The notes: generated by a model not told the origin, from the sequence alone. A stretch of 64,000 nucleotides of DNA from Takakia lepidozioides (GCA_030704615.1 CM060733.1:35960001-36024000), one strand, 5' to 3'. Shown: positions 35 to 31,907, counted from the first letter of the stretch. Numbers and translations: made by a program.

Positions 35-290
35 TCAACCACACAGCATAACAAGGCCTCTGTTATAAGACCCCAAAAGGGCCTGGGCTTTTGGCTGAGC
101 CTCGAGATTTTCAAAGTTGGCAAACTGAGGTACAGGAACAATTCCCTTGATGGATTGGAAGAGGGTGTCTCTCTGGTGAGAATACCCAGGACAGTGAATC
201 AGAAAGTGGATATTGTCTTCAGGCTCCCACACAACGGGCATTTGCAATCCCCCTTTCCTCTCTGTCACTGTTTGCTGTTCAAAGGTAGGC
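35..290 (-). mobile_element. LINE ORF2 C-terminal fragment (Cys/His knuckle) inside an NPC1 intron
   Basis: The translation ...EPEDNIHFLIHCPGYSHQRDTLF resembles the E-D-x-x-H-F-L-x-x-C motif at the end of non-LTR ORF2 proteins. Frameshifted. Confidence 0.5.
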
Positions 291-465: not shown

Positions 466-2277
466 CTGTGTAGTTTTTGGCACCCCCTCCCACAAAGTCC
501 ATTGCCCGAGTGTTCATGGCTGCAAATTTAACATCCTTGCAAGAATTATAAAACCTTGAACCATACTCCTCTGTCACATAGAAATCAATGCTGCTCACAC
601 TCTCGCCTGCGGGTTCCTGATGAAATAAGTCATGAACAGGTTCCAGGGTCAGCAGGCAGAAGCCAAATAAATGACCCACTGAGACGAAGAAGGAAGATGT
701 AGAAAGTCCACCAGAGGGCCACCAGGGTCCATGTGGCAAGGAAAAAACAAAGATTTTGATTAGAGTACATCAAGTGTCAACCAAACACGAGTCCGCCCAA
801 GGCCCTAGGGACACATGTAGAACAACACTGAACAATGGAAAATGGACAGTAGTACCACTCAACTAGAGAAAGGAGAATACAAAGAGGGAAAATGTGCTTG
901 TTGTACTTTGCTTCCCCTGCCGACATTTCTGTGGATGCAGAAGAGAGAACACATGGGCAAGGGTACAGAGTATGGCGAACTTACCTTATGGATAGATGCA
1001 ACATCGATAAAAAGGCTTTGGTCAGGAGAGCATGCCAGCTCACAGAAAAGGTTCAGAAAGTTGCGGAGGCACGCTGGACAGCCAGTCAAGAAAGGAACAG
1101 CCTGCCACCAGTTGTCACACCAGATTACATGCAAGCTGACTAATTTCCTGAAAGGAAGCATGGCCTGAAACTTAATTGAGATGAAAAGAAATTGAGATGC
1201 TCTAATGTCACTAACCAAAAATTCAATCTGTAGATTCCCTTTGACCATGGCAAGTGCCAACACAGGTATAAGAAAAACTTGAACTATTTGTAGTCTATAA
1301 CAACTGTACACTCTGCCAAGACCACAAGTTCACTTACACTACAGCTAGGGCAGACTTGGTTCAACATAGAAGCTCAATGTTGCTGGGGATTTCACCAAAG
1401 AATTATGGCTGTTCTAGACTTAATGACTGTCAAAGTAGCCCCCATGACAACCCAATACACCGTTAAGGCACAGCATTTCTTGAATTAGCTTTACAGGTAC
1501 TGTAGGCTATCCATCACAGTAAGCAGTATTTGGAAGGATTGTGGCCAATCTCCAAGATACCAAACTCAGACAAGCACCTTCATGGACAAGGTCTATACAC
1601 CTCCTTGCCCATCACCTCTGCTCTTTTCCCTGACTCCCAAAGTCAAAGAATGATGAAGGTAAGGACTTGAAGTAGGGAAATACAAAAATGAAACAGTAAG
1701 AACCTGCTGGACTTGATTACGTAGAACGTCAAATTGATCAGCAGTGCAGCATACATCCCCAGCAATAGTTGGACAGAGACTCTGAATTTTGTATGACAGT
1801 GTCTCACTTGGCTGCCAAAAGCATCCCAAACCAAAGAAATTGTTAGATTGCTGAAAATTGTCTTACTGCCAGTTTTAACAGCCTCACTTCATATACACTG
1901 ATGGTGGAGTTGATGTCTTCAGCAAATTGAGTAACAATTAAAAAAAAAACTGTAAGCCTTTGATTTCAGTATTGTCCCAAAGTCACCAACTATAGTGTAA
2001 TATTGACAAACCTTCCAAAGTATACAATACATGCATGAATATCTATAATAACATGAAAGCCTTGATTCAGTACCATGGAACCGATGAAACCTATCAGCAA
2101 GACATCAATGACACAAGAAACGGAAGCTAACAGATGTTACTTGAGTCATAGCTTCAGCTTAGCAGAGGACTTACAGTGACAGCTGGAGTAGAATACGGAC
2201 AATTTAAGGCTTTCCCATCTTCGCGTGTCCCACATAGATCGTACATTGCACACACATTCTTTCCATGCTTCTCTTTC
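466..2277 (-). CDS. NPC1: Niemann-Pick C1-like sterol transporter, N-terminal exons (2175-2277, 1704-1811, 985-1101, 466-616); gene continues left of the window; start/signal-peptide exon not resolved
   Basis: GT-AG bounded exons splice in frame to KEKHGKNVCAMYDLCGTREDGKALNCP / KIQSLCPTIAGDVCCTADQFDVLRNQVQQ / AVPFLTGCPACLRNFLNLFCELACSPDQSLFIDV / SIDFYVTEEYGSRFYNSCKDVKFAAMNTRAMDFVGGGAKNY. This is the cysteine-rich NPC1 N-terminal domain of plants. Confidence 0.92.
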
Positions 2278-5760: not shown

Positions 5761-6348
5761 TTGATACCGTAGTACCTTGGCAAGATCGACAATCATATGT
5801 CGAATATTTATTTTATTTTGAGAATTTCATTTCGACATATGGAATATTCCCAAAGATACTTTATTAGCATTCACAAAGCTGCAAAATTTTCAACACTTTG
5901 AAATGCCCCCACATGTGAGCTTCTCTACTGCGAGCTCCCCCCTCTTCTTTTATGTGCTTGACCACTCAGACTGTAAACGGGTATGGACTTTGCTGCTGGA
6001 CAGTGTTCATAAGCAGAAAATCCTGCCAGCTTGGTGGAACTCAGCAGGCATTCCATCCTCCCCACAATCCCTCTCCCTCCTTTCAAAAGCTCTAGCCTGG
6101 GACATATCTGCAGACATGTTTTCAGTTCTTAGAGACGGAGGGACCCACTTTGTACCTTTTCAAAACAATTGCAAAAGAAAAAAGGCAACAATTGTGTTCA
6201 CATGTCAGCTCCCTGTTTTGATCAATCCTCCACCAGGGTTCAAGTGGTTCTCCACCCCACAACCATCCGACATGCGTTCAAAGTATTTCTTCCTCCCACA
6301 ATGGCCATCAAGTCACGCAAAGAGCGTGGGCCTGATAGTCACACCCAC

Positions 6349-6917
6349 ATGAATCTGTCTCTTGTCTCCTGGAATGTGCGAGGTCTCGGCTCTAACCACT
6401 CTGCCCCCAAAAGGGCAAGGGTCAGAGCATGGGCCTCCACTCTGTTACGTGGTTCCAATATTATCTTTCTGCAAGAACACAAATTAAATCTACAAAAAAT
6501 AGCTTCCCTTGGTGCTTGGAAGTTGCCAGTTTAAGCTATAGTCGGGTCTGGAGGGAGCGCACACCATAACTACATACAAGGATGCCAAGAGAAACCTCTC
6601 CACGCTGTTACATGCCAAGGAGCAATTCTCCAGAGTCAAGGCTGGAGTCAATAGGAGCCTTAAAGGGGAAAAGATGAATAGATATTTCTTTGTTAAGGCT
6701 GCGCAGCGGCGAGCTGCGACAATTGTCCTAGCTTTGCGAGATGCAGATGGACTTTTGGTGGATAAGCCAAAAATCATGGCAGAAGTGGCAGCCTCATATT
6801 TTCAAGCTCTGTTTCAAAGGCAAGATCCTTCGCTGCAGAAACAAGAAGCAACTGCAGCCCTGCTGCACCACATCCCCTGCTCGATCTCTCAACTGGACAA
6901 ATCAAATCTGGCGGCCC
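6349..6917 (+). mobile_element. L1-like LINE ORF2, 5' part (APE endonuclease start plus linker), internally deleted and interrupted by the Gypsy element
   Basis: MNLSLVSWNVRGLG...IIFLQEHKL is the APE motif I/II; downstream GEKMNRYFF...YFQALF is the typical L1 linker. The reading resumes after 18826. Confidence 0.85.
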
Positions 6918-7004
6918 TGTCGTGCGCATACATATCGCTACACAACTACATCGCTGTCCAAACCACACCTACACATATATGCACAATAAAGTAGTCTGCC
7001 ACAA
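6918..7004 (-). repeat. Repeat A, terminal copy (87 bp)
   Basis: TGTCGTGCGCATAC...GTCTGCCACAA, identical by eye to 7354-7440. Confidence 0.95.
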
Positions 7005-7351
7005 TGATAAGAAAGCTAAGGACACACACGATGCAAAGCATGAAAACCAAAACCATCACTCTTTGAAATAGTAGTCGAGCCAGGGGCACCCCAAGCTATG
7101 GGGACTCCACCCCACAACAACCTACACTCCCATCATAAGCACTCTCAATCCTAAACGATGCAGGAGCTCGGTCGCGCAGGCTCAACTCGAGAAAGATGAG
7201 CCGCGCGACTGCCTCTCTCGTGAAGATAAGACGGACCAGGTGTCAAACTAAACTTGACACCTGATTTAACACTTGACCTAAATCCAAGTGTTAAATACAA
7301 ATAACTAGTTTTATTCTAGCTGTTTTCACACTGTGCTTATTTAACTTGACA
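7005..7351 (-). repeat. Repeat B (LTR-like, ~347 bp), 3' copy
   Basis: TGATAAGAAAGCTAAGG...TTAACTTGACA, near-identical to 18483-18826 apart from a few small indels. Confidence 0.95.
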
Positions 7352-7353
7352 GC

Positions 7354-7440
7354 TGTCGTGCGCATACATATCGCTACACAACTACATCGCTGTCCAAACC
7401 ACACCTACACATATATGCACAATAAAGTAGTCTGCCACAA
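7354..7440 (-). repeat. Repeat A, internal copy adjacent to the polypurine tract
   Basis: Second copy of 6918-7004, joined to repeat B by a GC dinucleotide (7352-7353). Confidence 0.95.
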
Positions 7441-7450
7441 TCGCCCCCCT
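7441..7450 (-). other. Polypurine tract of the Gypsy-MTase element
   Basis: The minus strand reads AGGGGGGCGA immediately before repeat A (TTGTGG...). Confidence 0.7.
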
Positions 7451-7699
7451 AGCTGGTGGATAGGTCCCTCTACCTCCAGATAGCTACAAGATGTAATAGC
7501 CACAGCCGTACTAAGTCCTCTATCACTGTCCCTATTGTACTCAAACTCTATAGACCAAGAGGCCGGGTACAAGAGTAGCCCCATCGTTAGTCGCCGTCTT
7601 GCAATCTATGAACTTGAGCCAAGATCTCGTGTGTTCAAGGTCTCCTAGTAGCTGGGTCTTGCGTTTCTTGTTAACCTCCCATGGTTGTATCCACTCCCA

Positions 7700-9012
7700 C
7701 TATCCAATGCAATGTGGACATAACCAATCCCCATCCGGAACCATCTCAAGAGGTGGAGTCAAGCATCCCATATGCCAACCTCTAGAGCACCGATCACATA
7801 CCAGCATGGTGGCTGCCCCTTTAGCAGACCCACACAACATGCACCTCAAACCTGCAGATACCACTGCCAGGTTTGGGTCAATCCTGCCATCGACATTCGG
7901 AAGGTGACATGGCGCACAATTACGCACATGGTCCTTCCAAGTGATGCCATCCCGACCCTCCAAGACCAAGACGCCTGAGGGCAAGACCTCTCGAACCCTC
8001 AAAATAACACGTCCTGCAGTCACATCCAGGGTCGTAGGAGCAGTCTGCTGCAGATAGACATAGTCACCAGGGTTGAATCTCCGAACCCCAGGACGATAGC
8101 CCCCACCACGTATGGTAGCATACCTCAACGTATCACGGTGTTGTGCAATGGCAAGGTTCTCGAAAGCCATGGGCATGACTCTCTTGAACAACTCTGCACG
8201 CTGCTCACATGCACGTGCCCACACGTCCGGATCGTCAAGGTTAAGAACTGTAGCAGCTTCTCTGCGAATGGATGTAGGCAAATCCGGCTCTCGGCCAAAG
8301 AGAAGAAAGTATGGTGAGAGAAAGAGGCAAGTGATGCTTGCTTGCTGAACCTGTAGCCCATGGCTAACCAGGGTAACTGAAGGTCCCAATCTCCTAGGTG
8401 TCCCTTCTGCAAGCCATACTTGCGCAAACCCCTCTTTACTGTCTGAACAACTCTCTCTGCCAAGCCATCGGCTTCAGGATGATCCCGAGAAGTGGTGCGG
8501 TGGTCTATCAAGGCTTTGTCACACAAAGCCTGAAACTCCCCCAAGAACTCTCTCCCTTGGTCCGTGAGTACCTCAGCTGGAGCACCGAATCGGCTAAGCA
8601 CACAATCCAGGAATGCATACGCAGCTCCCTCACTAGCCTTATCAGGCAATGGAACCAATTCAATCCACTTGGAGAAGTGCTCCACCATCACCAACACGTA
8701 CTTGTTGTGGCGCATGGTCAGTGGCAACGGCCCTGCGAAGTCAAGACTCCACCTGTAGCCCAATCCCATGATCGGAAGAGGGTGCAATTGTGGAGTAGGG
8801 GCGTTGAATGAAGCACGCACCCTGTCACACACCATGCACCTAGCCACAAAGTGTTGTACCTCTGTGTGCATACCACGCCACCAATACTGCCCCTGCAGTA
8901 GACTATGAGTGCGTCGCACCCCAAAATGCCCCAACTCCTCATGGGCATGCCGCACTAACCGTGCCCGCTGTGTTGGGTGAGGCACAATCCTCACTCGACC
9001 ATCCTCCCACAC
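7700..9012 (-). CDS. DDE integrase with C-terminal PHD finger (one frameshift near 8320)
   Basis: HHCC zinc domain (HEELGHFG...CMVC); core WSLDFAGP, VLTDQGREF, DGLAERVVQT; C-terminal C4HC3 CMLC...LVCDRC...WHMGC...WLCPHC (7703-7849). Confidence 0.92.
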
Positions 9013-10690
9013 TCGGAGCAGGTGTGTCCCCTCCCACCTGAACCTCTGGCTCGTTGTAGGATCCGATCCCTCTCCTTGGCAGTCATAGTGGCTGCCGTGT
9101 CTCCACTGCGGAGGTAGTCCAACACAACTGAATCCTCATGTATATCTTTGGCGCCACCCTGCTCATTGCTGGCCTCAGGGTCCTCAGACACTTGATCTAC
9201 AGTCATCCCTGTTGTAGGTCCAACCTGGCCTTCCGCTGCCAAGATACACAGAAATGCAGATGCATGCCATCCGGGCACCATCTCCTCGTCCGTCTCACCA
9301 TGCCACCGAGCTCCAGTGTCATCCTGCTGGCTCGTGCATGGATTGCGACTCAACCCATCTGCATTTCGATTGACCAAACCCGGTCGATGCACCACCTGAA
9401 AGTCATACTCTTGAAGGATGAGTGCCCACCGTGCAAGCTTCCCCGTAAGCTTGTCTGACTCCATCAACCACTTGAGTGGTTGGTGATCCGTGACAAGGGT
9501 GAAGAGATTGCCGTATAAATAGCACCTGAAGTGTGCCACGGCCCACACTGCAGCTAAGCATTCTCCCTCATATGAGCTATACTTAGACTCTGCAGCATTG
9601 TTCGAGCGGCTAGCATAAGCCACTACGAACTCTCTTCCCTCATCATCCACCTGTGTGAGCACCGCTCCAAGCCCCAGCATGCTCCAATCTGTATGCAGCT
9701 GAAAAGGACGCCCCCTGATAGGTCGTCTCAAGATGGGCGCCGAGGTCAACCTCGCCTTGAGCTCTTGAAAAGCTTGTTCTTGCTCATCTTCCCACTGCCA
9801 CTCCTGGTCCACCTTGGTCAGCTTGGTTAGAGCCTTTGCAATGGCACTAAATCCCTTAACAAACCGTCTGTAATAGTTTGCTAACCCCATGAAAGCTCGA
9901 ACTCGGCTCACATCCGTGGGGCGTGGAACCTGTGCAATGGACTCTACCTTAGTCTGCTGTACCCCCAATCCTCCAGGATATATCATGTGACCCAGATACT
10001 CAATCTGGTTGTGGAAAAACTTGCACTTGCCCGGATGTAACTTCAATCCGTGCGTCCTCAAGCGCTCAAATACCCCCTGAAGGTGTCTCTCATGCTCCTC
10101 CACCGTAGCACTAAAGATGATGATGTCATCTATGTAGCACCGAGCAAACTCCACCCCTGCTAGAATCCTGTCCATGACTCTTTGAAACTCAGCGGGAGCG
10201 TTTTTAAGCCCAAATGGTAAGAACCGCCACTGGTATAGGCAATCTTCCGTGCTCATTGATCCCCCAGAATGCCGTCTTTTGCTTATCCGCCTCCTTGATC
10301 GGCAACTGGTGATATCCGGATCGTAAATCCAACGTGCTAAAGACCTTGGAATGCCCAATGGCATCAAAGATCTCCTCTGGTGTTGGCATGGCATACCTAT
10401 CGGACTGGTCTGACGATTTACAGGCCGGTAATCACCGCACATACGTCTCTCCGTCCAATTGCCATAGACATCCTTCTTAGCTGGCATCACTGTGGCTGAA
10501 GCATACTCTCCACCAGAGAGCTCCACCAAACCTGCCTCCCAGAGATCTTGAGTCCTCATCTGAATCAAAGACCTCTCCATGTCACTGTATCTATAGGGTC
10601 TCCGAAAGATTGGCGTGTCAGTGGCCAACTCAATACGGATCTCTTGACCCTTCAGTGCTCCCAAGTCCTTCAAACTGAAGGCAAAGCAAT
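8991..10690 (-). CDS. Reverse transcriptase and RNase H (frameshifted)
   Basis: [22 protein letters not shown] (alternate frame), PFGLKNAPAEFQR, YIDDII, LHTDWS, YEGECLAAVWA, TDHQPL. Confidence 0.95.
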
Positions 10691-11124
10691 TCCTGTAAGC
10701 CCTCAGGAACCGCCGTATACGTCGTCTCTCTCCTCCGGTGACAATGGGTCCAATATCAGGCTCCCAATTGTCCTCCGTAACTGCAACCTTAAGTCCAGTG
10801 GGCTTAGAGGTAGAGGACGCGTCCCGTGGTTGCTATGCTGCAACCTCTTGAGCAGTACCCCCTTCCTGCTCAATCAATGACAAGGCCTCATCCTGCCCCA
10901 TCATCTCATCATTGAGAACCTCCTCATCCCGAGAAGAATCCCCAACCTCATACATCACAGCTGCCTTCGCTGCCAACTCCCTCTGAACCTCGAGCACCTC
11001 CCACATGTGCCATGGATGTCTACACCTCGTGGTCCTCACCGGCTCGCCCCCACTCGCTGCCTGTACCGTCTCGGTAGGCAGAGAGACCATCAAGGGAAGT
11101 GCACTCCGCACTCTACGTTGCTCA

Positions 11125-12085
11125 GCCATAGCCAAGCTGACAATCCAGGTCAAGCAATTGAGATCCATTGCTTGCCCCAACACCTGACGACGTGATGCCT
11201 CAGAAAGGGAAGGCACCGCCGTGGTCCCAGTGGAAAAACCCCATAGCCCGCTCTCGCTCGTCGGCATTAGGCTCCACTAACTGCTGCAATTGAGCATCCC
11301 ACAGGAGGCCAGGTCCACCATCCCGAAAAGCATGGGATCCTGGGAAGCTGAGCAGTGTAGGTAATGCTGCTCGTGGTTGACCCACCCTGTTGACCACTGC
11401 CAAAGGCGAACGGTCATCGTGTCTCACACGTTGAGACTGCCTTCCTGTGTCCAAAATGCCATCCACGGTGAGGTGTGCTAGCCGCTGCACCCCATCAAAT
11501 GCACGCTTGAGCAGTGCGGGTGGCATCAAGTTAGTCCACCATAGTCGTGGACGATGAGCCCGTGACCCCACTGCAGCTGCATCCAGCAATACTGCTGACC
11601 CAAGCCACGACCGGACTTGATGCACACTGGCCATCACCCTGGCCCGAGAATCACCCATCAGTGGCACATTCTCCAAGATGTATGCCGGAGATACAGCCTG
11701 ATGAAGCTGCAAGTGGCGCAAAATCCGCACCATCTCCCAAAACAGACCCGTCCTCGAGTCTCGCAATCCATTGCCATGCCCGGCTGATGAATGCCCTTGG
11801 CAGGGCCAACCTGCCACTACCAGATCAATGGAGCCAACCCTGCTCCAAATCCTGCGCCCCCAGCAACGCAATGTCTGCTGGCAAGGCCTGAGTATCCACG
11901 AACTGCAGACACGGCAACAACTCAGGGTGCTGCTGCACCATCTGAGCAACATGGCGCAGTGAGACGCGTCGTGCAGTCTCATCCCTCTCCACATACAGGT
12001 AACGTCGTACTCGTACACCTGCCTGCAAGCACTGCAGCCAATCCAGTGCTGATCCCGCCAAATAAGTCAGAAGGCATATGCCTTC
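11125..12085 (-). CDS. C5-cytosine DNA methyltransferase domain within the retrotransposon polyprotein (split by about four 1-bp indels)
   Basis: Ordered motifs: I DLFGGISTG, II YVERD, III PADI, IV DLVVAGWPCQGHS (catalytic PC), VI YILENV, VIII RAHRPRLWW, IX ERERAMGF, X RRQVLGQAM. Confidence 0.9.
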
Positions 12086-12479
12086 ATCCGGTCGCTGCCA
12101 CACAAGAGGTGTGGTGTCCAATGGCGACAACTGAGGTGGCCCTGGTACAATCACCGCACTCTCCTCCTCTCCTGACGGTACAAAAGCTTTTACCCAAGCT
12201 TGTTGCACCCGTCCATCAGCAGCGTGCTGCAAATCCTTGCTCGTACCCCACAACGGAGTGTGAGCAACCATGGCAGGCAACTCCGCCGTACCATGCATGT
12301 CATCCTGCTCTGCTGGAGGTGGCACATCCTCTGCATGGGCATTGCCTTCCAGCAACTCTCCAGGCCAGCTGACTGCAGCTGTGAAGGCGGCTAGTGTTGG
12401 CATCTTGCCCCGCTGGAGCAGCTGCAATACCCCCAATGAATGTCACAGGGAGCTGTGCACGGCGACCATCCCCTGACTG

Positions 12480-12900
12480 CCATCCAGGCCTGTAGGATGC
12501 TGACTCCTCCCAGAAAATCCAGGGTGAAGCCCATGGGGTATAACACTGCCCCACCAACAAGGAGGACATCGTAAGAGACCGCGTCTGTCACAATGGCCTT
12601 GGCTCGCATCACTGAGCCATCTACAGGATGATCCGGCTGCAGTCTAATAGCCAACTGATGCCGTGTCATGCCGCGAGCCTGCTCTGATCCTCCCAGAGAT
12701 GTCTGTATCTGGAAAGGACAAGGCTCCATATCCGCCTCCATGAGGCCCAAACCTGCAATAGCAGCTCTGCCCAACATCAGTGGCTGAGCTCCTGAGTCCA
12801 ACAAGACCCGCAGTGGCCGGTACTTCTTGCCTGCCGGTCCACTCAAAGTGAAAATGCCTCCCTGGTTGTCTAACAAGACAACTCCAGGTGTCACCATGGC
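12480..12900 (-). CDS. Retropepsin-like aspartic protease
   Basis: VLLDSGAQPLMLG active-site motif; downstream YDVLLVG resembles the D-x-x-x-G closing motif. Confidence 0.8.
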
Positions 12901-13198
12901 GCGCTCAAAGGCTGGCCTAGCTGGCAGCTCCGTCAACCTGGCAGCTGCGCTTGCGCCCCAGGCGCTGCCGTGGCAGTCTTGACCCTCAAATCCGAGGATC
13001 CCTCTGCCACTACACCTTCCACTAACTCCGCAGAAGATGAAGTGACCCTCCACTCTCACAGAGTGTTGTGCTAGTCTGAACACTGCAGCTGGTCTCCCCC
13101 GGCGTCGCAATCATGGTTGCCGAGAACAGTGGGGCTTGACACACAAGAGGTGGCTGCTCCCAATAACACACCGGCTGCACTAGCCTTGGTAGCAGGTG

Positions 13199-14853
13199 TC
13201 AGTGCTGCACGGTAGCTCTCCCCAATGGCATAGTAACCTCCGCCTCGGTAACAGTCGGGCGAGAACTAGGTGCCATGGATGGCGTTGACACTGTCTCCGC
13301 CAATGTGAATGACTGAGGAAGCCTTGCCTGACGGCTTGCCTCCCCACGCTGTGGATCCAATTCCACCTCTGCACCTCGTGGCTCAGGAACTCGTGTTGCT
13401 CCTCGAGTCACGGCTGCAGCAGACTCCACCTGCTCTAGTGGTAGTGCTGCTCCGCACATGAATCCCATGCCTCCCATATCTCCTCCATCAGGAGCAGGAG
13501 GTGGACCATCCCGCCTGGGAGCCGGTACCGCCTGAGCTATAGCCATGGCAGCGAGCCTCTGCTCTAGCTGCTGAAGCCGTTGGCCATGCCTTGGTCAAAA
13601 CCTGACCTCCGCGTCCTTGCCATGTGGAGCTTGCCCTTGGCCTGCACCTCGTGCCCGACCACCTCGTTCCTTTGGGCTGGTCCACCTCGCCCCCGGCCCA
13701 CCATTGTTCCCTGGAACTGGCCTGGGCGCAACTCAGGATGCAAGTCATAACACTGGGCATCTACATGCCCATACTTGCCACAATGCCCACACTGCAACTG
13801 TGCAGGCTGTGCTTGTGCCGGCCTTCTGCCACTCTCTGGGCAATCTCTCTTGACATGGGGTCCTCCACATGTCCAACATATCACCCCTGGTTGCTGTTGG
13901 CCTGCAAAAGATGCCACGGGCCTCTGCACCTGAGGTCCCCTGTAAGCTCCATGGAACTTGGGGCTGGGCAACCTTGCCCCCCTGACCACGCTGTTGGGCA
14001 GTCCCTTGTGCTTGTGGGCTGACAGCTGTGCCCCGTACAGGCATGTCCTTACAAATCCAATTGTAACAACTCGCTCCTCCACCATGTTGAGCTCAATCCG
14101 CTCAGCCAGACAAAACACATCTGCTAATGTGGGTTGGGCTGCTTGTAACAGGGTTGCATCTCGCACCCTTCTCTGAGCTCCTTGTCCAGAATTCCATACC
14201 AAAACTGGATTGCCTGAGCTTCAGTAACCCCTTGGGTCACACTTATCAAGCGCCTCATACGAGTGTACGCCTCTCGCAGGCTCTCACTGGGTTTGCGCTG
14301 GAAGTCTTGCAAACTTCGCAGCTTTCTCTGTCCGTACACCTTGGTAGTTCCTCCGCAACTCCTGGAAGAACTCCACCACCGGGTGGTTGAATCTAGGCAC
14401 ATGTGTTGTAGCTGTGGCAGGAGGAGTAGTAGCACCTTTTGAACTGGTACCACCTGCAGAAGTACCAGCACTACTGCTCCACTACTAGTGCTGGCAGTGT
14501 GGGAGCTATTGGTACTGATGCAGCTACTGGTCGCGTCGTGCCTCGAGTAATGGAGACGTAGTCAGGTGACCAATACATCCTCCACTCCTCAATCTCTGCT
14601 TCATGTCCTGCCTGAACTCGTGGTAATCGTCCATAGGCGGGCCTTCCAAATGCTGGAACAGTCCCTTCCACGCCATGAATGGGGTGAATAGATGTGGATT
14701 GCGCATCTGCTGCAAATCACACCAGCTGTCGAACTCCTGGATAAAGTCATCCAACTCGATTGTGCCCACAGCTCCAGAGTACCTACGAGGCCCCTTGGTA
14801 GCTCCATACATCTCCTCCATGTCGTCCCACAACAATGGCGAATGAAAGTGCAC
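13199..14853 (-). CDS. Gag-like protein with two zinc knuckles (frameshifted)
   Basis: Capsid-like YSGAVGTIELDDFIQEFDSWC and FQRKPSESLREAYTRMRRL; knuckles CWTCGGPHVKRDC and CGHCGKYGHVDAQC. Confidence 0.8.
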
Positions 14854-16899
14854 ACCTGTTGATGAAGCCTCCGAGTCTGTGTCTGACTCTACAGTAATTG
14901 AGGGTGGCGGTGTGAAGGTGGTCTGAACCGAATACCTCGTCTTGTGAACCCACTCTCACTGTTACTGCCTGTAGCCGTACTCCCCTCAAAACCCTTGGGT
15001 AACTCCGTAATGACACTCACAATGTGCACCTCCTCCACGTGACACTATAAGGCTCTAGTACTAATCTAATAGTGACACGGGTTGGCACCTGTTGCAGTCT
15101 AAGGGTCATATCCCAGTGGCTCAGGGCACCTGCACCTGCATCCACCGCAAGAACTCCTATGGTTGGCTGGTCATCAACCCAGCCTCACCATAGAAGAAAC
15201 ACTGGTGGTCTTGCTGGTCATCACTCCAGCCTCACCACCGACAGCATACTCTAGGATTGACGGTGATCAAATCCGGCCTAATCCCTATGAAAGCAAGCGC
15301 CCACACAAAACCAACATGGAGGCAGTCACAGTCAAGCATGCAGGTGTTGGGGGGGATCCAAACACAAGAAATCAAAACATCAACACCCCCACACCAAAAT
15401 AAAGCAGACAACGCTGATGACCTGGAATATCCCGCCAAAACCCCGGACTGACTGGCCTCCACAAGAGAGGCTTTGGCAACTACAAGTACAAGGTAATGAA
15501 AATAGTATACAGAGATGATGGAGGGGAAGCAAAAGAATAGAAGCCCGACCAAGCAAGATCTAATCCTGATCTATGCTATCAACTGCCAGACTTCTCTCAA
15601 AGTGCCTCGTATGCATGATGGTAAGGTGTAGGAGGTATATCTATGTCCAGGAACCCTGCCACTAACCTTGTCCCAAGCTACAGTAGCTCGCTCTAACCAA
15701 CCCTCCTCCTCTTTCTGCCAGGTAGAGACAAGCAATACTCCCCTATCTCCCGCTCACTGAACACTAAAGAAAACAAAGGTAGGGTGATAGTCTCTCAACT
15801 CGACAAAGCTTTGAGACGGTTTGCGGGTGTCCTCATTGCGAATGACTGCATCTCATTCACGCACAACAAACATGTCATTTGCTGATGAACCCGCCGTCGG
15901 TTGCCCTGTGCGAGCGGATCCGGCTTGCAAACCATGTTGATTGCACACAAACTTGTGTAGCTCCTGCTCCTCTGCATCCAGTACACCACGGCCTTGTGGA
16001 TGAACACCTGGTCCCCGGCTGTGCTGTCTTGGCTGTGTTCCAAGCCTAGCTTCCACCCACTTTGGTATTTCACCTACAGCTGCAGAACTGCTGGCTCCAA
16101 CAGAGTTTTGACTGTCCAAGCGATATGAGGCCCTCAATGCCAACTACAGCAGTCTGTGTCTATGCTAATGCCTGACTCCAAGTATTGACCAACAACTCGT
16201 CCAACTGTTCTCCACTCAAATCAGTCTGAGTTCCTTGGGAAACATAAATCCTGTCCCCTTGTGGCACAGGATAAGAGAAGAAGAGACCTGCCTTCAATTA
16301 CGTCTCATTTCCCCCCAGCCATGCAAGGAGTAACATCCACAGATTGGCTCTCTATGTAGACCAGCACAGGTTCTAGAGACAGGATTGGGATCTTTTAGGC
16401 ACACTCCACTCTAAAATTCCATAGATTTTTAGCAGAGTCCCCAAAAAACAGAAAAGGGTATAGGGGTAGGTAGATATTCCCCTTTTGCAGATATTCCCCA
16501 CAATGAGTCCCAAAGGCCTTTGCCCACAGATATGCCCCCTTTGGCTCGACCTATTACCTTCGATCACAAAGAACGGTTTTTTTTTTTTTTTATATGTGCC
16601 CCACCCCAGCACGTTGTTCTTTGTGTTAGTGCTTCCCCCTTATTTATTTACCTGTTCCCTTAGCTTGCTGATCTAAGGTGTTTCTGTTAATTTGGGGTCG
16701 CCTCGCCATTACCACGGAGCAGCTCGATTTTTGGACTCCGATCGGCTTCTCCTCCATGATGGACCGCGTTGCCGCTTCGTCATCCCTCAGCTGCATTTGT
16801 TCAGGTGTCCGTCCCACATACTGATCATTGCTGACTCTCAGGTCGTTTCCCGTAAGTTCCAGCTCGCATGGAGGGAGATTACCGGCAGCCTGCACTTCA

Positions 16900-17180
16900 A
16901 CTCGACTGCCTCCCTGATACCATGCTGTGGATCTGACCAGTACTCAATGCTTCATGCAGACACATATTGATCCGCGTAGTCGGTCGCGAACGGCAAGTCC
17001 TCTGCATCCCCTTCACTAATCGTGCACTCCTTGAGAGGTGCCTTCTCCTTTGCTTTAGCAAGCTGGTGAGGATTGATCCAGAATGCTCACATTCTTGGCA
17101 TCCACAGTTTTTTCAATCCCCAATGTGGCGAATCCCGTGCCGCCACCAACATCTACCACCACCAAGGTAGGATCATCGAG
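16900..17180 (-). pseudogene. VTE3: Captured fragment of MPBQ/MSBQ methyltransferase (VTE3/APG1), SAM-binding part
   Basis: Manual translation: LDDPTLVVVDVGGGTGFATLGIEKTVDAKNVSILDQS(fs)HQLAKAKEKAPLKECTISEGDAEDLPFATDYADQYVSA*SIEYWSDPQHGIREA. This matches plant VTE3 as I recall it. Confidence 0.9.
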
Positions 17181-17440
17181 GCAAATCTGAAGTAAGTTAG
17201 GCTGTTTTTGAATTGGGTTTCAGCGATGGCAATGGCTGCAAGGATGGGCACCATCGGCAGTGGAAGGGGTGACAGTTGTGGACAACCAACAAAGGCTTCG
17301 CTCTCGGGATATCCTGCAGGTTTGAGCTCATCATCATGCTTACATAGGTTAGCGTCGACAGGCTTGTTGCTCAGCGGGCAATTATAAGCCAAGAACTGGA
17401 GCGTGCATGTGAGCAGAAGGAGAAACGTAGCGATCTTCGA

Positions 17441-17618
17441 TTGCGGGCTGTCAGTGCAGACCAAAGCGTCTCAAGGCCTGCGTCGCAGCTGCGGTTCATC
17501 CAGCACAAGCAGGAGGCATTCTGGTTTTACAGCTTAGTGTCTGTATTGTACGACCATATCATAAACCCTGGGCATTTGGGCGGAGGACATGCAGGAGGAT
17601 ACTCTAGAACCAGCAGAT
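17441..17618 (+). pseudogene. VTE3: Captured fragment of VTE3/APG1, N-terminal part (opposite strand to the other fragment)
   Basis: SRPASQLRFIQHKQEAFWFYSLVSVLYDHIINPGH(fs)WAEDMQEDTLEPAD, the segment immediately preceding LDDP.. in VTE3. Confidence 0.9.
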
Positions 17619-18466
17619 GGACCTCCACAGGAGCAACGGTGGCCAGAGCACATAGGAGAGCTTTAGCAAGCTTGGTGGAGCTGACAAAGTCACCAACAAT
17701 TATCATTGTCTGATTCTGTAGTTGCTGCAAGGGCCTCTCGTCGTCCAGTGGCCATGGCAACGGGAAATCTAATGGCATCCATTGCTGCTGCAGATACTTA
17801 GTATCCAAGCCCTCTGTGATCACATCTGCGCATAGGGGACGATGAAGGTCAGGCTTTTGCGAACAAGAGAGCAGGGAAGAAGAAACAGCTTCAATTTCTT
17901 GCTTTATACTTAGGACCAGCCGATGGAGCTCCTGCCCATTCTAGCCTGTACATCGTCAGCATCGTTGCTGGAGGGCTCAACCCAAGCACCCAGTTGGAAT
18001 GTGCGCTCAGCTATGACGTTGGCTTCCCAGCAGCCCCTTCTCAGGAGAAGAGCCACAGTCCAGAAGCTTCGTGTGTTGATTCCCTGGATTACTGGCCTGA
18101 TAGCACTGTTTTAACCCACACCTGCGTAAGGCAAGCTCGTCGCCGATGACACTGTGAACCTGACGAACTAATGCCGCCGGATCACTTATCCAACAAGAGC
18201 GCATCTGCCTTTCGGAAGTGGAGACCCTTGATATATGCGTAAAGAACCACCGGTGCCTCCGACATAGGAAGGCCTTCGATCACATGCAAACTAGGGGCAG
18301 GCATAGGAAAACCAACGACAAGTTGATGATCAATCGCAAGGCTAGAATCTACCAGAGAAACCTGCAGCTCAAGTTTTAACCAACATAGAGCCCCCGTCTC
18401 TCTCTCTTTCAAAACAAAAACCACAAGTGCTAAAACTAAACTCACCTCTGGCACTCACAGATGCAA

Positions 18467-18483
18467 GCTCATCTTTCTCGAGT
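18467..18483 (-). other. Self-complementary primer-binding site
   Basis: GCTCATCTTTCTCGAGT (+) abuts repeat B and is the exact reverse complement of ACTCGAGAAAGATGAGC at 18660-18676 inside B. No TGG-tRNA PBS is present. Confidence 0.85.
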
Positions 18484-18826
18484 GATAAGAAAGCTAAGGA
18501 CACACACGATGCAAAGCATGAAAACCAAAACCATCACTCTTTGAAATAGTAGTCGAGCCAGGGGCACCCCAAGCTATGGGGACTCCCCCACAAAACCTAC
18601 ACTCCCATCATAAGCACTCTCAATCCTAAACGATGCAGGAGCTCGGTCGCGCAGGCTCAACTCGAGAAAGATGAGCCGCGCGACTGCCTCTCTCGTGAAG
18701 ATAAGACGGACCAGGTGTCAAACTAAACTTGACACCTGATTTAACACTTGACCTAAATCCAAGTGTTAAATACAAATAACTAGTTTTATTCTAGCTGTTT
18801 TCACACTGTGCTTATTTAACTTGACA
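18483..18826 (-). repeat. Repeat B (LTR-like, ~344 bp), 5' copy
   Basis: Near-identical to 7005-7351; TG...CA ends. Confidence 0.95.
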
Positions 18827-19750
18827 GCCCCCCTGTCAGTGTACTTTGGCTTCGCAAAAATCGCCAGGACTGGATGGTCTCCCAATTGAACTTTTTAAAG
18901 CGCTATGGCATACAATTGGGGAGGACTTCCTCCTTATGGCTAATGATATTATGGTAAAACAGATAATGCCCTCGCAGATGGCGGAAGGTCTCATTACTCT
19001 AGTCTTTAAGAAAGGAGATAGAGAAGATTTGGCCAACTACCAGCCAATCACTTTGCTAAACTCAACTTACAAGATTATCGCAAAGACCCTGGCCTTGAGG
19101 TTGCAGCCCCTCCTGCCGAAAATTATTAGGAAGGAGTAGACTAGCTTTCTCAAGGATCGGATGATCTTAGACAACATCTTGCTGGCCCACGAGGCCCTTC
19201 ACAGAGCAGAAATAAACAGCCAGCCGCTGGCCTTCTTAATGCTTGATTTTGAAAAGGCCTTTGACTCCATTGATTGGACTTTTCTGGAAGGGGCTATGGA
19301 GAAATCAGGGCTGGGAGGGCCTTTCCTGACATGGGTCCACATCCTCTTGCATGCAGCATCCAGCAAGGTCATGGTTAATGGGGTTATATCGAAGCTCTTT
19401 CGCATTTCCAGATCGGTGCGGCAGGGTTGCCCCCTGGCACCCTTCCTCTTCCTCATAGCGGCGGACTCGCTGGGTCACATGTTGCACTACAGGCAAGACA
19501 TCATTGGCCTTCACTTGCCCACGCTGACCCTGGAGATGCTGAAGCTCTCGATGTATGCAGATGACACTACACTATTGCTGGACAACTCCACAAAGGCCAA
19601 CGTTGACAAGGCACTCTAAATTCTCCACACCTTCTGCCTGGCTACAGGGCTCAAGGTCAATTGGAAAAAATCAATGGGCATTTTGTCCAAGCTGCATAAT
19701 GAAGCAATGCCTATCCACCAATGGGACCAACAACTCTCACATGTATTTGA
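18827..19750 (+). mobile_element. L1-like LINE ORF2, reverse-transcriptase part (degenerate, in-frame stops)
   Basis: KSPGLDG, NYQPITLLNSTYKIIAK, LDFEKAFDSIDW, RQGCPLAPFLF, YADD. Confidence 0.92.
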
Positions 19751-19761
19751 CCATGTCACCA

Positions 19762-19950
19762 CTAGTGTTGTGCGGGTAAATCATTTACCCAGACTGCAGG
19801 TAAATCAGAAAAATATTAATGATTTATCCGAATATATCATTTTTATTTACCCTTACCCTTATGAATAATACATTATTTCTATATACCCTTTATCCACGGA
19901 TAAATTATTATTATGTGAGGGTAAATAAGAAAAGGATAAATAGAAACAAG
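19762..19950. mobile_element. MITE-like GGGTAA-rich element, related to 5476-5760
   Basis: Shares the start AGTGTTGTGnGGGTAAAT and GGGTAA/TTACCC motifs. Confidence 0.4.
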
Positions 19951-20509
19951 GTAGAAGGTCTTCCTCCTCTTGAGCCTAGACTCCTTATATCCGCCTTAAT
20001 TTTAGCATCCTTCGCAAGTGTGTCCTTAGTAAGCTTCCCAAGGTCCCTCTTACAACCTCCAATGCAGGGTACCAGTGTCCCGCGTTGATAGAGAGGAGAT
20101 TATTAGTCTTAGATATTGAAATTATATATTACAAATTGCATGATCCTAATTCGCTTATTTAGTTACCTTTGGTCTCCTGACTCCATTTACATTTTTTTTT
20201 TTCTTGCGCCTTATATTCTTCACTGGGGCCTAAGTTGTCCCTTTCTTCATTCTAGCAATGACCGAAGGTCGGAAGCTAGTTTAGCGTAGAGCAGGTATAG
20301 GGTGCCATAGTGTCATCGTCGCCACATCATCGTAGCCAGGTCATCGTCGTCGTCAATTTCTTTGGAATCTGCCCGGAGGGCCCGCGCGAAATAGGCCAAT
20401 AGAAATCGTCGCGCCAACGTCTTTGGAACTGCCCGCAATGCCCGGATCTTGATCTTCTTGAACTGCAGGAGCTCTGCGTTTTCCGCCCATCGTTCACCTT
20501 GCAAGCAAC

Positions 20510-21110
20510 ACCACATCTTGTTCAGCCATTTGAAAACTCCCTTCGCATCCTTCATGCACCCACATTTGGCATACATGTCCACCAGGGCAGTGTTCAGGAT
20601 GACATCTGGTACAAATCCATTTTTGACGATGTCACCATGGACCTCTTCCCCCTTTTCCAGAGCTCCTAGGCTTGCACATGCATTGCAAACACAAACAAAT
20701 GTGCTGCGGTTGGGCTTCACCCCTTCGCACATCAATTGCTCATAGGTCTCCAAAGCCTCCATCCCGCATCCTTGCTGTGCATATCCTCCAATCATCGCAC
20801 TCCACGACACCACACATCTCATTCAGCTATACTGTTGAACACTCCCTTTGCATCCTCGATGCACTCACATTTGACATACATGTCCAGCAGGGCAGTGTTC
20901 AGAATGACATCGGGTATAATTCCAGATTTGACGATGTCACCATGGACCTCTTTGCACCTTTCCAAGGCTGCCAGGCTTGCACACGCATGTCCACGAGGGT
21001 ATTGTTCAGAATGACACTTGGTACAATTGCAGCTCTGACAATGTCGCCATGGACCTCTTTCGCCCTTTTCCTGAGCTGCCAGGCTTGCACACGCATCGCA
21101 AATGCACACA
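20510..21110 (-). pseudogene. PLS-class PPR repeats, inverted copy
   Basis: [74 protein letters not shown]. Stops and deletions present. Confidence 0.88.
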
Positions 21111-21142
21111 ATCTCAACAAGTCAATTGTGGTCGTAAGATAC

Positions 21143-21241
21143 CTTTTTCCAGTCTCTACCATATTTCCGAAATGCTTGATAGAAGAGCTCCGGGTCCTCT
21201 TTGCTCCAGGGAGGTCCAAGTATGTTCGACAATTTGCGCTT
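21143..21241 (-). pseudogene. Orphan exon of an ALWAYS EARLY/LIN-9-like gene (N-terminal SANT/Myb domain)
   Basis: AG/GT-bounded 99-nt exon encoding [33 protein letters not shown], which matches the ALY-type KRKLSD.LGP.WS.EEL..FY..YRK.G..WKK motif. Confidence 0.75.
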
Positions 21242-21529
21242 CTGATCACCAGCCCGCCCACTCACCTCAGTCCCATAACCGCATTCAAGCAGCATCCAAA
21301 ATTGGATTTCACTCTTGCTCACGCTGGGTGTGCTACCCATCTGCCCAGTCCCAATGGCACCATTGCTCCTGGATATGGAATTTCGTCGGGATCCAACAAC
21401 CTGCAACCTGACATCACCAAAATCAGGCAAATTGTTCAATTGAATGCCTTTGATGAGGATGGATCTATAGGCAAAAATAGAAAGAGAGCTCAATTTGCTG
21501 GGACAGAAAGTGATATTCCTTGAACGCGA

Positions 21530-31655: not shown

Positions 31656-31893
31656 CTATTGGTTTGTCGGAGCTCTCAAGGATTCCTCGGGCTCCGACTC
31701 CTCAGATTTTCTCCGCTCTTGCGCGGCCTCATTTTCAGAAGCATGCATCGCTTCCTCAAACGGCCACCTCGGTGACACGTCGCCCCATCGGGCTCACCAG
31801 GGTCATCATCTTTTGGGCCATTCCGCTTTCGCTTTGGCTTGCCCGACCCCATGATGAGGCCAATCCCAAGGACGATCGCGTACTGGACTCTAA

Positions 31894-31905
31894 GCTCTGA
31901 TACCA
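31894..31905 (-). other. tRNA-iMet primer-binding site
   Basis: Minus strand TGGTATCAGAGC, 2 nt after the 5' LTR. Confidence 0.92.
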
Positions 31906-31907
31906 AG

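What the first reader, a model, noticed from the sequence alone, without database searches (positions are those of the whole stretch)
6918..18826. Land-plant Gypsy retrotransposon carrying its own DNA-methylation writer and histone reader, with self-priming and split termini
Seen: one TSD-bounded, young element (near-identical repeats) combines Gag-PR-[C5-MTase]-RT-RH-IN-[PHD], a self-complementary PBS and a B-internal-A-B-A terminal layout. Known: Dnmt-carrying retrotransposons have been reported from dinoflagellates and the charophyte Klebsormidium. I do not know of this full combination in an embryophyte. Inference: the element could methylate its own cDNA or insertion site and choose chromatin via the PHD, making it a self-contained epigenetic replication system.
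Basis: partly seen in the sequence, partly recalled or inferred. Interest (0 to 1): 0.95.

Follow-up and report, generated by a model that had tools for sequence, protein, structure and literature searches.

The report
Gypsy retrotransposon with DNMT3 and PHD
This is a very recent but already broken copy of a retrotransposon that carries its own DNA methyltransferase and a histone-reading PHD finger; the kind is published from the alga Klebsormidium, and this copy shows it also lives in liverwort-type land plants with ends arranged in an unexplained, conserved way.

Summary
Window 6918-18826 (minus strand) is one Ty3/Gypsy-type element with Gag(CCHC)-PR-C5 MTase(DNMT3-like)-RT-RH-IN-PHD. Its ends are TGTC...GACA with a 4-bp target duplication. 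Its PBS pairs with a stretch inside its own terminal repeat, and its repeats are laid out A1-internal-B1-A2-B2.

It is not a new kind. De Mendoza et al. 2018 described KnitGypsy-Dnmt3 of Klebsormidium with the same Gypsy domains, a Dnmt3 in Pol and the same DIRS-like repeat order. The window element falls in one well-supported RT clade with it.

I found the same design elsewhere:
- Calypogeia fissa, a near-intact copy
- Marchantia polymorpha
- Klebsormidium nitens
- about 18 metagenomic loci
- relatives in Closterium and a chlorophyte

The window copy is defective (at least 8 frame changes, several stops), although its repeats are almost identical, so it was probably mobilised in trans.

What looks unreported: presence in land plants, the PHD as a family trait, covarying self-priming sites, and a conserved palindrome at B1|A2. 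The ends that reverse transcription should make (B-A...B-A) are offset from the ends the integrase used (A...B). How the second B arises is unresolved. The roles proposed for the MTase and PHD are untested.

The parts
6918..18826 (-). Whole element (11,909 bp), ends TGTC...GACA
6914..6917 (.). Target-site duplication copy, GCCC on the plus strand (3' side of the element)
   Evidence: The same 4 bp occur at 18827-18830. 4-bp duplications also flank the Calypogeia copy and the metagenomic copies.
18827..18830 (.). Target-site duplication copy, GCCC (5' side of the element)
18483..18826 (-). A1, the 5' terminal repeat (344 nt). It starts TGTCAAG and ends CTTATCA. It contains the primer segment at A nt 151-167 (plus-strand 18660-18676), followed by the conserved TTGAGCCT.
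18466..18482 (-). Self-priming PBS (CTCGAGAAAGATGAGC) directly abutting A1. It is complementary to A nt 151-166/167.
   Evidence: The RNA fold pairs the 5' end with the PBS (z = -4.9). Covarying pairs occur in L003 and L029.
14941..18465 (-). 3.5-kb leader with no detectable domain or tandem repeat
13046..14940 (-). Gag region with two CCHC knuckles. Degraded: two frames and at least 7 in-frame stops.
12514..12939 (-). Aspartic protease (LLDSGAQ), 62% identical to the Calypogeia copy
10959..12409 (-). DNMT3-like C5 cytosine methyltransferase, split over three frames (12409-11840, 11841-11236, 11237-10959). Motif IV PCQ, motif VI ENV and motif VIII HRPRLWW are present. The motif I region is garbled.
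9045..10802 (-). Reverse transcriptase and RNase H. The N-terminal half of RT has a local frame disruption around 10261-10407.
8311..9051 (-). Integrase: H2C2 zinc finger and DDE core (rve)
7706..8347 (-). Integrase C-terminal region ending in a PHD finger (PHD at 7709-7843)
7441..7470 (-). Conserved block ending in the polypurine G-run (…CCACCAGCTAGGGGGGCGA), directly 5' of B1
   Evidence: It is near-identical in Calypogeia, Marchantia and the metagenomic loci.
7354..7440 (-). B1 (87 nt), from TTGTGGCAG to CGCACGACA
7352..7353 (-). GC spacer at the centre of the B1|A2 palindrome GACA-GC-TGTC
   Evidence: It is conserved in L003, L010 and the metagenomic loci.
7005..7351 (-). A2 (347 nt), the internal copy of A
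6918..7004 (-). B2 (87 nt), the 3' terminal copy of B, identical to B1

Best explanation
What it is. This is a non-autonomous but very recently inserted copy of a Ty3/Gypsy-type LTR retrotransposon. It belongs to the 'Gypsy-DNMT3' lineage first described as KnitGypsy-Dnmt3 in Klebsormidium. The host here is most likely a liverwort-like land plant.

Shown:
- Pol encodes PR, a DNMT3-like C5 methyltransferase, RT, RNase H, a DDE integrase and a C-terminal PHD finger.
- The element is bounded by TGTC...GACA and a 4-bp target duplication, which is the signature of integrase-mediated insertion.
- The PBS directly abuts A1 and is complementary to a segment inside A.
- A G-run polypurine tract directly abuts B1.
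- The repeat order is A1-internal-B1-A2-B2, with a conserved palindrome at B1|A2.

Inferred replication:
- Minus-strand synthesis is self-primed, as in Tf1. The 5' part of the RNA folds back on the PBS.
- Plus-strand synthesis starts at the G-run. Reverse transcription therefore copies B+A as its repeat unit, and it regenerates both A and both B in every cycle.
- The integrase does not use the tips of that product. It uses the TGTC/GACA half-sites at the B|A boundary.
- The A2|B2 joint in each copy is a precise tip-to-tip joint of the RT product.
- My preferred reading (low confidence) is a directional, RT-side step, for example a template switch from the A tip to the B tip. That step would add a B to the right end, and the integrase would then act on the outermost TGTC/GACA sites. 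This would give A-int-B-A-B when the extension happens and A-int-B when it does not.

Inferred roles of the accessory domains:
- The PHD would play the part that the chromodomain plays in chromoviruses, tethering the integrase to a histone H3 tail state.
- The MTase would be carried in the particle as part of Pol and could methylate the new cDNA or the insertion site.
- Neither role is tested.

This particular copy cannot make its own proteins, so it must have been copied with proteins from intact relatives.
For: Identity and domains:
- Domain calls come from Pfam.
- The MTase matches DNMT3A/3B/3C best, then plant DRM.
- The MTase is 70% identical to the Calypogeia copy and 37% (E = 3e-64) to the K. 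nitens KnitGypsy-Dnmt3 copy.
- In the RT-RH tree, all MTase/PHD/split-repeat elements form one clade (99/99) apart from two ordinary Gypsy elements. The window copy sits in the liverwort subclade (100/100).
- The published description of KnitGypsy-Dnmt3 gives Gypsy domains, Dnmt3 in Pol and 'A-coding region-B-A-B' repeats (PMC5890265).

The same terminal grammar elsewhere:
- Calypogeia L003, Marchantia L002, K. nitens L010 and about 18 independent metagenomic loci.
- 4-bp target duplications: window, L003, L029, L049, L077, L014, L016, L024, L063 and L074 are perfect. L070 and L018 match 3 of 4, and L083 matches 2 of 4.

Self-priming:
- The window has a 17-nt exact complement.
- Calypogeia and L029 have different sequences at the same position, each still complementary to its own PBS, and each next to the conserved TTGAG(CC).
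- The RNA folds pair the 5' end with the PBS.

Regeneration of the repeats in each cycle:
- B1 = B2 and A1 is nearly equal to A2 in young copies, although B and A differ greatly between lineages.
- In old copies the B pair and the A pair have diverged to a similar degree.

Directionality: no locus has B upstream of A1 or an A-B-A 5' end (0 of 14).

Defective copy. Natural near-intact or intact relatives exist: Calypogeia has three same-frame ORFs separated by two stops, and P0272 and P0292 are single ORFs.

PHD as a family trait. The closest solved PHDs are CHD4, PHF12, KDM5A/B, ATXR5, PHF21A, AIRE and UHRF1.

Precedent for an integrase cutting palindromic LTR-LTR junctions: PMC1905944 and PMC1180852.
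Against: - No transcript ends, cDNA intermediates or enzyme activities are known for this family, so every replication step is inferred from sequence.
- Ordinary reverse transcription cannot by itself produce the A2|B2 joint. The template-switch step is a proposal without direct evidence.
- Many metagenomic copies end in a single B (A-int-B). These may be B1/B2 recombination deletions, direct integration products, or in part short-read assembly collapses. I could not separate these possibilities.
- The only published activity test of the Klebsormidium MTase showed no methylation and was called inconclusive.
- The window copy has a garbled motif I, and the Calypogeia copy has KNV in place of ENV.
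- The host was not identified.
- I could not place the RT against REXdb or GyDB reference lineages.
Confidence: 0.8

Rival explanations
1. The split ends arise because the linear RT product (B-A-int-B-A) is ligated into a two-LTR circle in the nucleus. The integrase then opens the circle at one of its two B|A palindromes.
For: - The A2|B2 joint is exactly the U5-tip/U3-tip joint expected of a two-LTR circle.
- B1|A2 is a perfect palindrome of the kind that retroviral integrases can cleave (PMC1905944, PMC1180852).
- A one-LTR circle opened in the same way would give the observed A-int-B form.
Against: - A circle has two identical palindromes. Opening the other one would give A-B-A-int-B, and this was never seen among 14 loci with a visible 5' end.
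- The junctions are precise in all lineages, whereas end-joining usually leaves some imprecise joints.
- Tyrosine-recombinase elements (Ngaro/PAT, SymbioDIRS) show the same A1-int-B1-A2-B2 order. This points to the reverse-transcription side and not to the integration enzyme.
Confidence: 0.15
2. The element is a DIRS-like (Ngaro/PAT-type) tyrosine-recombinase retrotransposon that was misread as Gypsy.
For: The A1-internal-B1-A2-B2 repeat order is the hallmark of split-direct-repeat DIRS elements. DIRS elements are also known to carry methyltransferases.
Against: - No tyrosine recombinase was found in any ORF, including the leader.
- A full H2C2 + DDE integrase, an aspartic protease and CCHC Gag are present.
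- 4-bp target duplications are present, and DIRS elements lack them.
- The MTase is a C5 DNMT3 type, not the Dam-like adenine enzyme of classical DIRS.
Confidence: 0.01
3. The combination is a one-off: a chimera, a nested insertion or an assembly artefact that put an MTase gene and extra repeats into an ordinary Gypsy element.
For: The window copy is full of frame changes. The repeats are short enough to confuse an assembler.
Against: - The same domain order occurs in a single open frame in natural copies (P0272, P0292 and the Calypogeia ORFs).
- The same repeat grammar, palindrome, PPT block and target duplications occur in four named genomes and about 18 metagenomic loci.
- The MTase core is about as conserved between the window and Calypogeia as RT-RH is (70% against 66%).
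Confidence: 0.01
4. The MTase and PHD are inert passengers, or they serve a purpose unrelated to methylating the element's own DNA. One example is RNA methylation. Another is acting on host chromatin in general.
For: - The Klebsormidium MTase domain gave no DNA methylation in yeast (inconclusive).
- Some relatives have lost the MTase. K. nitens L010 keeps only a 48-residue remnant.
- The MTase sits at two different places in Pol in different subclades.
Against: - The catalytic motifs are kept across Klebsormidium, Closterium, a chlorophyte and liverworts.
- The published Ka/Ks is below 0.2 for the Klebsormidium copies.
- The PHD is retained in nearly all long relatives.
- Retrotransposon DNMT3 domains from dinoflagellate DIRS elements do methylate CG de novo.
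Confidence: 0.25

Closest known systems
KnitGypsy-Dnmt3 of Klebsormidium nitens (de Mendoza et al. 2018, PMC5890265)
   Same: - Gypsy domain set.
- DNMT3-type MTase inside Pol, between PR and RT (L007).
- DIRS-like A-coding-B-A-B repeats.
- Same RT clade and a homologous MTase.
- Same GACA-GC-TGTC junction, and a G-run next to B1, in a K. nitens relative.
   Different: - The host is a liverwort-like land plant, not a charophyte alga.
- RT identity is only about 40-45%.
- The paper's main text does not mention the PHD, the self-priming site, the target duplications or the palindrome.
- I found the PHD in K. nitens only in an MTase-less sister element, because the MTase-bearing contig stops inside the integrase.
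Split-direct-repeat tyrosine-recombinase retrotransposons (Ngaro, PAT-like, SymbioDIRS-Dnmt3)
   Same: - A1-internal-B1-A2-B2 repeat order, in which the internal B1|A2 joint mirrors the joined ends.
- A Gypsy-like RT/RH.
- Some carry a DNMT3 domain.
   Different: - Those elements use a tyrosine recombinase, have no protease and make no target duplication.
- This family has a DDE integrase, a protease and 4-bp duplications.
Tf1/Sushi and plant Tcn1 self-priming Gypsy elements
   Same: The PBS next to the 5' repeat is complementary to a segment of the element's own RNA and not to a tRNA. The predicted structure includes an adjacent stem.
   Different: - Those elements have ordinary LTRs and a chromodomain.
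- Here the ends are split and the C-terminal reader is a PHD.
- Whether the RT belongs to that clade was not tested.
- The transcription start is unknown, so the primer may or may not be the very 5' end of the RNA.
Chromoviruses (chromodomain fused to the integrase C-terminus)
   Same: A small histone-tail reader is fused to the C-terminus of the integrase, so by analogy it would act as a chromatin tether for integration.
   Different: No binding data exist.
EpiLTRs (bioRxiv 10.64898/2026.05.21.726589)
   Same: LTR retrotransposons of algae and protists that combine a DNMT with a chromatin-reader domain.
   Different: - Those carry a Dam-type adenine MTase, a DNMT4-related C5 MTase and a chromodomain.
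- That preprint states that the acquisition is distinct from the streptophyte Gypsy-DNMT3.

Membership tests
Ty3/Gypsy (Metaviridae) LTR retrotransposon | Pol order PR-RT-RH-IN, with Gag upstream | tested here: met
   Pfam hits and translations. The order was confirmed against the intact relative P0272.
Ty3/Gypsy (Metaviridae) LTR retrotransposon | DDE integrase and a short target-site duplication | tested here: met
   Integrase_H2C2 and rve. There is a 4-bp duplication in the window, and 9 further perfect cases in relatives.
Ty3/Gypsy (Metaviridae) LTR retrotransposon | Two identical long terminal repeats at the two ends, with the PBS after the 5' LTR and the PPT before the 3' LTR | tested here: not met
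   The PBS follows A1, but the PPT precedes B1, not A2. The ends are A...B, not LTR...LTR. The element has a Gypsy gene set with non-canonical termini.
Gypsy-DNMT3 (KnitGypsy-Dnmt3) | DNMT3-type C5 MTase inside the Pol polyprotein | tested here: met
   PF00145. The best solved-structure matches are DNMT3A/B/C. The MTase is homologous to the one in K. nitens L007, E = 3e-64 via Calypogeia. It is in-frame in intact relatives.
Gypsy-DNMT3 (KnitGypsy-Dnmt3) | A-coding-B-A-B repeat structure | tested here: met
   The K. nitens relative L010 shows B1-A2-B2 with the same palindrome.
Gypsy-DNMT3 (KnitGypsy-Dnmt3) | RT groups with the Klebsormidium elements and apart from other Gypsy lineages | tested here: met
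   RT-RH tree with a 99/99 clade. Only two ordinary Gypsy elements served as outgroup, and no REXdb or GyDB references were available.
DIRS order (Ngaro/PAT type) | Tyrosine recombinase in place of a DDE integrase | tested here: not met
   No Phage_integrase hit in any ORF, including the leader. A DDE integrase is present.
DIRS order (Ngaro/PAT type) | No target-site duplication | tested here: not met
   4-bp duplications are present.
DIRS order (Ngaro/PAT type) | Split direct repeats A1-int-B1-A2-B2 | tested here: met
Tf1/Sushi/Tcn1 self-priming elements | PBS complementary to the element's own 5' RNA | tested here: inconclusive
   Complementarity, covariation and folding support it. The transcription start and the primer have not been mapped.
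Tf1/Sushi/Tcn1 self-priming elements | RT/IN phylogenetic placement in the Tf1/Sushi clade, and a chromodomain | not tested
   No reference sequences were available. The C-terminal domain is a PHD, not a chromodomain.
Chromovirus | Chromodomain at the integrase C-terminus | tested here: not met
   Only a PHD was detected.

The most novel reading that the evidence does not exclude
This Gypsy clade, recently active in a land plant, would integrate with a DDE integrase a DNA whose usable ends lie at an internal palindrome and not at the tips made by reverse transcription. Every integrated copy would then be a directional circular permutation of a two-LTR element. The same reverse-transcription trick would underlie the split repeats of DIRS/Ngaro elements, which would make this clade a living link between Gypsy and tyrosine-recombinase retrotransposons. 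Its DNMT3 and PHD pair would work together as a portable de novo methylation unit that marks the new copy.
Probability: 0.25. Interest if true: 0.7.

Novelty: new member of a known kind. Interest (0 to 1): 0.45.

Why it matters
**Testability.** The family is present, partly in near-intact form, in liverworts, including the genetic model Marchantia polymorpha and a chromosome-level Calypogeia assembly. The open question from the 2018 work is what a retrotransposon does with its own DNMT3. That question could now be tested in a tractable land plant.

**The ends.** The terminal design is a clean, conserved puzzle. The ends set by reverse transcription and the ends used by the integrase are offset by one repeat unit. 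This points to an unrecognised step in LTR-element replication and to a possible tie to the origin of DIRS elements.

**Annotation.** For genome annotation, it warns that LTR finders will mis-delimit these elements.

Tried and rejected
**Searches that gave nothing or little**
- An exact-signature scan of the metagenome collection (PPT block, gap, palindrome) found nothing. I replaced it with a protein-seeded scan.
- L001 (intact P0272) holds no terminal repeats. The contig evidently lacks the ends.
- L005 and L006 looked like two independent single-B copies but are the same locus.

**Host identification failed**
- No hit above 76% identity to the RT-RH ORF.
- The only host-gene fragment is an NPC1 N-terminal exon. 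It is too short for the length-filtered search, and the tools do not accept a read-through of the gene.
- The PPR array is degenerate.

**Not possible with these tools**
No reference sequences were available, and I did not type any from memory. The REXdb paper mentions no PHD, no MTase, and neither Klebsormidium nor Marchantia.

**Ideas rejected**
- DIRS identity, rejected as set out under the rival explanations.
- A shared extra base at the A2|B2 joint as a mark of non-templated addition. L026 and L038 share the same flank but differ at that base, so it is a later mutation.
- Metagenomic single-B ends as proof of a second integration form. Recombination or assembly collapse cannot be excluded.

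**Not done**
Natural near-intact copies answered the question of ORF integrity.
- No structure prediction was run, because the domain calls were unambiguous.

Full report
**1. What is in the window**

Two repeat families define the ends.
- A is 344/347 nt, at 18483-18826 and 7005-7351.
- B is 87 nt, at 7354-7440 and 6918-7004.

In element orientation the order is A1 - internal - B1 - GC - A2 - B2.

B1 and B2 are identical. A1 and A2 are identical except for one 13-nt patch holding a 3-nt indel and three substitutions.

The element begins TGTC and ends GACA. It is flanked by a 4-bp duplication, GCCC on the plus strand. It interrupts the reverse-transcriptase ORF of a LINE.

**2. Coding content**

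Pfam finds a C5 DNA methylase, RVT_1, RNase H, Integrase_H2C2, rve and a PHD finger, in that order on the minus strand. Two CCHC knuckles and an LLDSGAQ protease motif lie upstream.

The copy is not intact.
- Measured against a natural intact relative (P0272), the reading frame changes at least eight times.
- Measured against the much closer Calypogeia copy, the gag part also contains at least seven stops.
- The first half of RT is locally out of frame, and MTase motif I is garbled.

Motif IV (PCQ), motif VI (ENV) and motif VIII (HRPRLWW) survive.

The terminal repeats are almost untouched, so the insertion is very recent. A defective RNA must therefore have been copied with proteins supplied by other family members. 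This is an inference.

The 3.5 kb between the PBS and gag holds no recognisable domain and no tandem repeat.

**3. It is a family, not an accident**

The RT-RH ORF finds its best named relatives in liverworts:
- Calypogeia fissa, 67%
- Marchantia polymorpha Mp_2g26090, 68%, already carrying PF00145 next to RT
- Riccia sorocarpa, 73%

Klebsormidium and Closterium follow at about 40%.

An exhaustive search with the MTase piece gave 2,398 hits, many of them polyproteins of 1,500-3,400 residues. In those polyproteins the MTase sits either between PR and RT, as here, or between RH and IN, and most end in a PHD. Named examples include Closterium species and the chlorophyte Monoraphidium neglectum.

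The Calypogeia locus L003 is the best comparison.
- It has three ORFs in one frame, separated by only two stops: Gag-PR-MTase (1,339 aa), RT-RH-IN (797 aa) and IN-C plus PHD (248 aa).
- Its A copies are 99% identical and its B copies 100% identical.
- It has the same A1-int-B1-A2-B2 order and a 4-bp duplication, GTCA.

Marchantia L002 has the B1-A2-B2 part.

A protein-seeded scan of metagenomes returned 80 loci. About 18 independent ones show the full 3' arrangement.

**4. Relation to the published element**

De Mendoza et al. 2018 describe KnitGypsy-Dnmt3 of Klebsormidium nitens as a Gypsy element with a Dnmt3 in Pol. [quoted passage not shown]

- I fetched a K. nitens contig with CCHC-MTase followed by RT-RH-IN (L007).
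- I also fetched a sister element that lacks the MTase except for a 48-residue remnant. It has a C-terminal PHD and B1-A2-B2 with the same junction (L010).
- The MTases are homologous.
- In an RT-RH tree, all these elements form one clade (99/99) apart from two ordinary Gypsy elements. Subclades follow host groups, and the window copy sits inside the liverwort subclade (100/100).

The window element is therefore a member of that known kind.

I found no paper that reports the family in a land plant. Later papers cite 'streptophytes' only through the 2018 work. The plant LTR classification (REXdb) does not cover it.

**5. Terminal grammar**

Across the window, Calypogeia, Marchantia, K. nitens and the metagenomic loci, the same rules hold.

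- (a) The element starts TGTC and ends GACA, with 4-bp duplications. Ten of the thirteen scored are perfect.
- (b) The sequence right after A1 is complementary to a segment at about nt 150-167 of A, just before a conserved TTGAG(CC) motif. The window, Calypogeia and L029 have three different sequences there, each matched by its own PBS. This is covariation. Both RNAs fold with the 5' segment on the PBS plus a conserved neighbouring stem. This is the logic of Tf1-type self-priming, known in plants for the Tcn1 and TAR lineages.
- (c) A strongly conserved block ending in a run of six G lies directly 5' of B1. This is the expected place of a polypurine tract.
- (d) B1 and A2 are joined as GACA-GC-TGTC, a perfect palindrome equal to the two element ends placed head to head.
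- (e) A2 and B2 are joined precisely: the last base before the PBS is followed by the first base after the G-run block.

**6. What this implies**

Points (b) and (c) mean that ordinary reverse transcription would yield a linear DNA B-A-internal-B-A, with B+A as the repeat. Points (a) and (d) mean that the integrase used ends lying at the B|A boundary. Point (e) means that each integrated copy contains a tip-to-tip joint of the RT product. An integrated copy is thus a circular permutation of a two-LTR element.

B1 = B2 and A1 is nearly equal to A2 in young copies, while both repeats differ greatly between lineages. Each pair must therefore be remade from one template in every cycle.

A two-LTR circle opened by the integrase at a palindrome would explain the layout, and there is precedent for such cleavage. 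Random opening, however, should give A-B-A-internal-B as often as the observed form. None was seen among 14 loci with a visible 5' end.

I therefore favour, with low confidence, a directional step on the reverse-transcription side that adds a B to the right end, followed by integrase action at the outermost TGTC/GACA sites. Tyrosine-recombinase elements show the same A1-int-B1-A2-B2 order, which also points to the RT side.

Many metagenomic copies end in a single B with a matching duplication. They could be the product made without the extension, B1/B2 deletions, or in part assembly collapses. I cannot tell which.

**7. The accessory domains**

*MTase.*
- The MTase aligns best with DNMT3A/B/C catalytic domains, then plant DRM.
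- Between the window and Calypogeia, its core is as conserved as RT-RH (70% against 66%), while gag is at 39%.
- Published Ka/Ks for the Klebsormidium copies is below 0.2, but the yeast activity test for that enzyme was inconclusive.

*PHD.*
- The PHD is closest to the fingers of CHD4, PHF12, KDM5A/B, ATXR5, PHF21A, AIRE and UHRF1.
- From general knowledge, most of these read histone H3 tails that are not methylated at lysine 4.
- That would fit tethering to silent chromatin. It would also echo the ADD-plus-MTase logic of host DNMT3. No tool result here tests it.

**8. Host**

The window is rich in transposons: a LINE, a second canonical Gypsy and a Copia-like element. It also holds a degenerate array of PLS-type pentatricopeptide repeats, a land-plant trait from general knowledge, and one NPC1 exon. 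With the liverwort affinity of the element, a liverwort-like bryophyte is the most likely host, but it is not established.

**9. Limits and omissions**

ORF integrity was judged from natural copies.
- Breaks are described only by coordinates.
- Placement against reference Gypsy lineages, transcript mapping and all biochemical claims remain open.

**Verdict**

This is a real and well-observed feature and a member of a known kind, Gypsy-DNMT3. It extends that kind to land plants and exposes a conserved, unexplained terminal design. It is of moderate interest.

Noticed in passing
window 5900-6917 and 18831-20000: A LINE-type element whose RT ORF is split by the insertion (ORFs 6674-6916 and 18846-19139 on the plus strand; RVT_1 at 19161-19619). 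The two halves are out of frame by one base across the empty site, so the LINE was probably already decayed.
   Followed up: partly
window 20300-25400: A degenerate array of PLS-type pentatricopeptide repeats on both strands, with many stops. It looks like a decayed or rearranged PPR gene cluster, and it hints at a land-plant host.
   Followed up: partly
window 25773-32547: A second, canonical Gypsy element on the minus strand, with ordinary LTRs of about 515 bp (98-100% identical) and gag, protease and RT/RH fragments. In the RT tree it is far from the MTase clade.
   Followed up: partly
window 51885-56926: A Copia-like element with flanking repeats 93% identical and two 331-aa ORFs carrying RVT_2 and rve/gag_pre-integrase.
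   Followed up: no
window 859-1311 (minus strand): An ORF with a Niemann-Pick C1 N-terminal domain (4e-13). It is probably an exon of a host NPC1-like gene, and it is the only clear host gene fragment seen.
   Followed up: no
window 14941-18465: An unusually long (3.5 kb) leader between the PBS and gag, with no domain, no tandem repeats, and only 129 nt similar to the 1.7-kb Calypogeia leader.
   Followed up: partly
L010 9534-9677 (Klebsormidium nitens DF237340.1): An MTase-less sister element of KnitGypsy-Dnmt3 keeps a 48-residue remnant of the MTase C-terminus. This suggests loss of the MTase, not original absence. It also has the PHD and B1-A2-B2.
   Followed up: partly
L008 8654-9628, L009 7957-8973, protein P0318 (Monoraphidium neglectum): A subclade carries the homologous MTase between RNase H and integrase, not between protease and RT. 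This means either a domain move or a second capture. L008 also has an upstream 1,795-aa ORF with no known domain.
   Followed up: partly
L014-L083 (metagenomic loci), 3' ends: At least 20 copies end in a single B followed by unique flanks, with one A upstream and mostly matching 4-bp duplications (A-int-B form). Three loci (L011, L022, L025) read B-A-PBS-internal, which is either tandem copies or an assembler path.
   Followed up: partly
L021-L087, B repeats: Old copies show many CG-to-TG/CA changes, for example CGCACGACA becoming CACATGACA. This is the decay pattern expected of methylated CpG.
   Followed up: no
L003 about 9090-9120 (Calypogeia MTase motif VI): The otherwise near-intact Calypogeia copy reads KNV where the catalytic ENV motif is expected. 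The window copy has ENV.
   Followed up: no
L002 15385-15599 vs 20720-20940: In Marchantia, a second A-like repeat and matching internal sequence lie about 5 kb downstream of the first element's B2. There is evidently another partial copy nearby. No A1 was detected upstream of the first.
   Followed up: no
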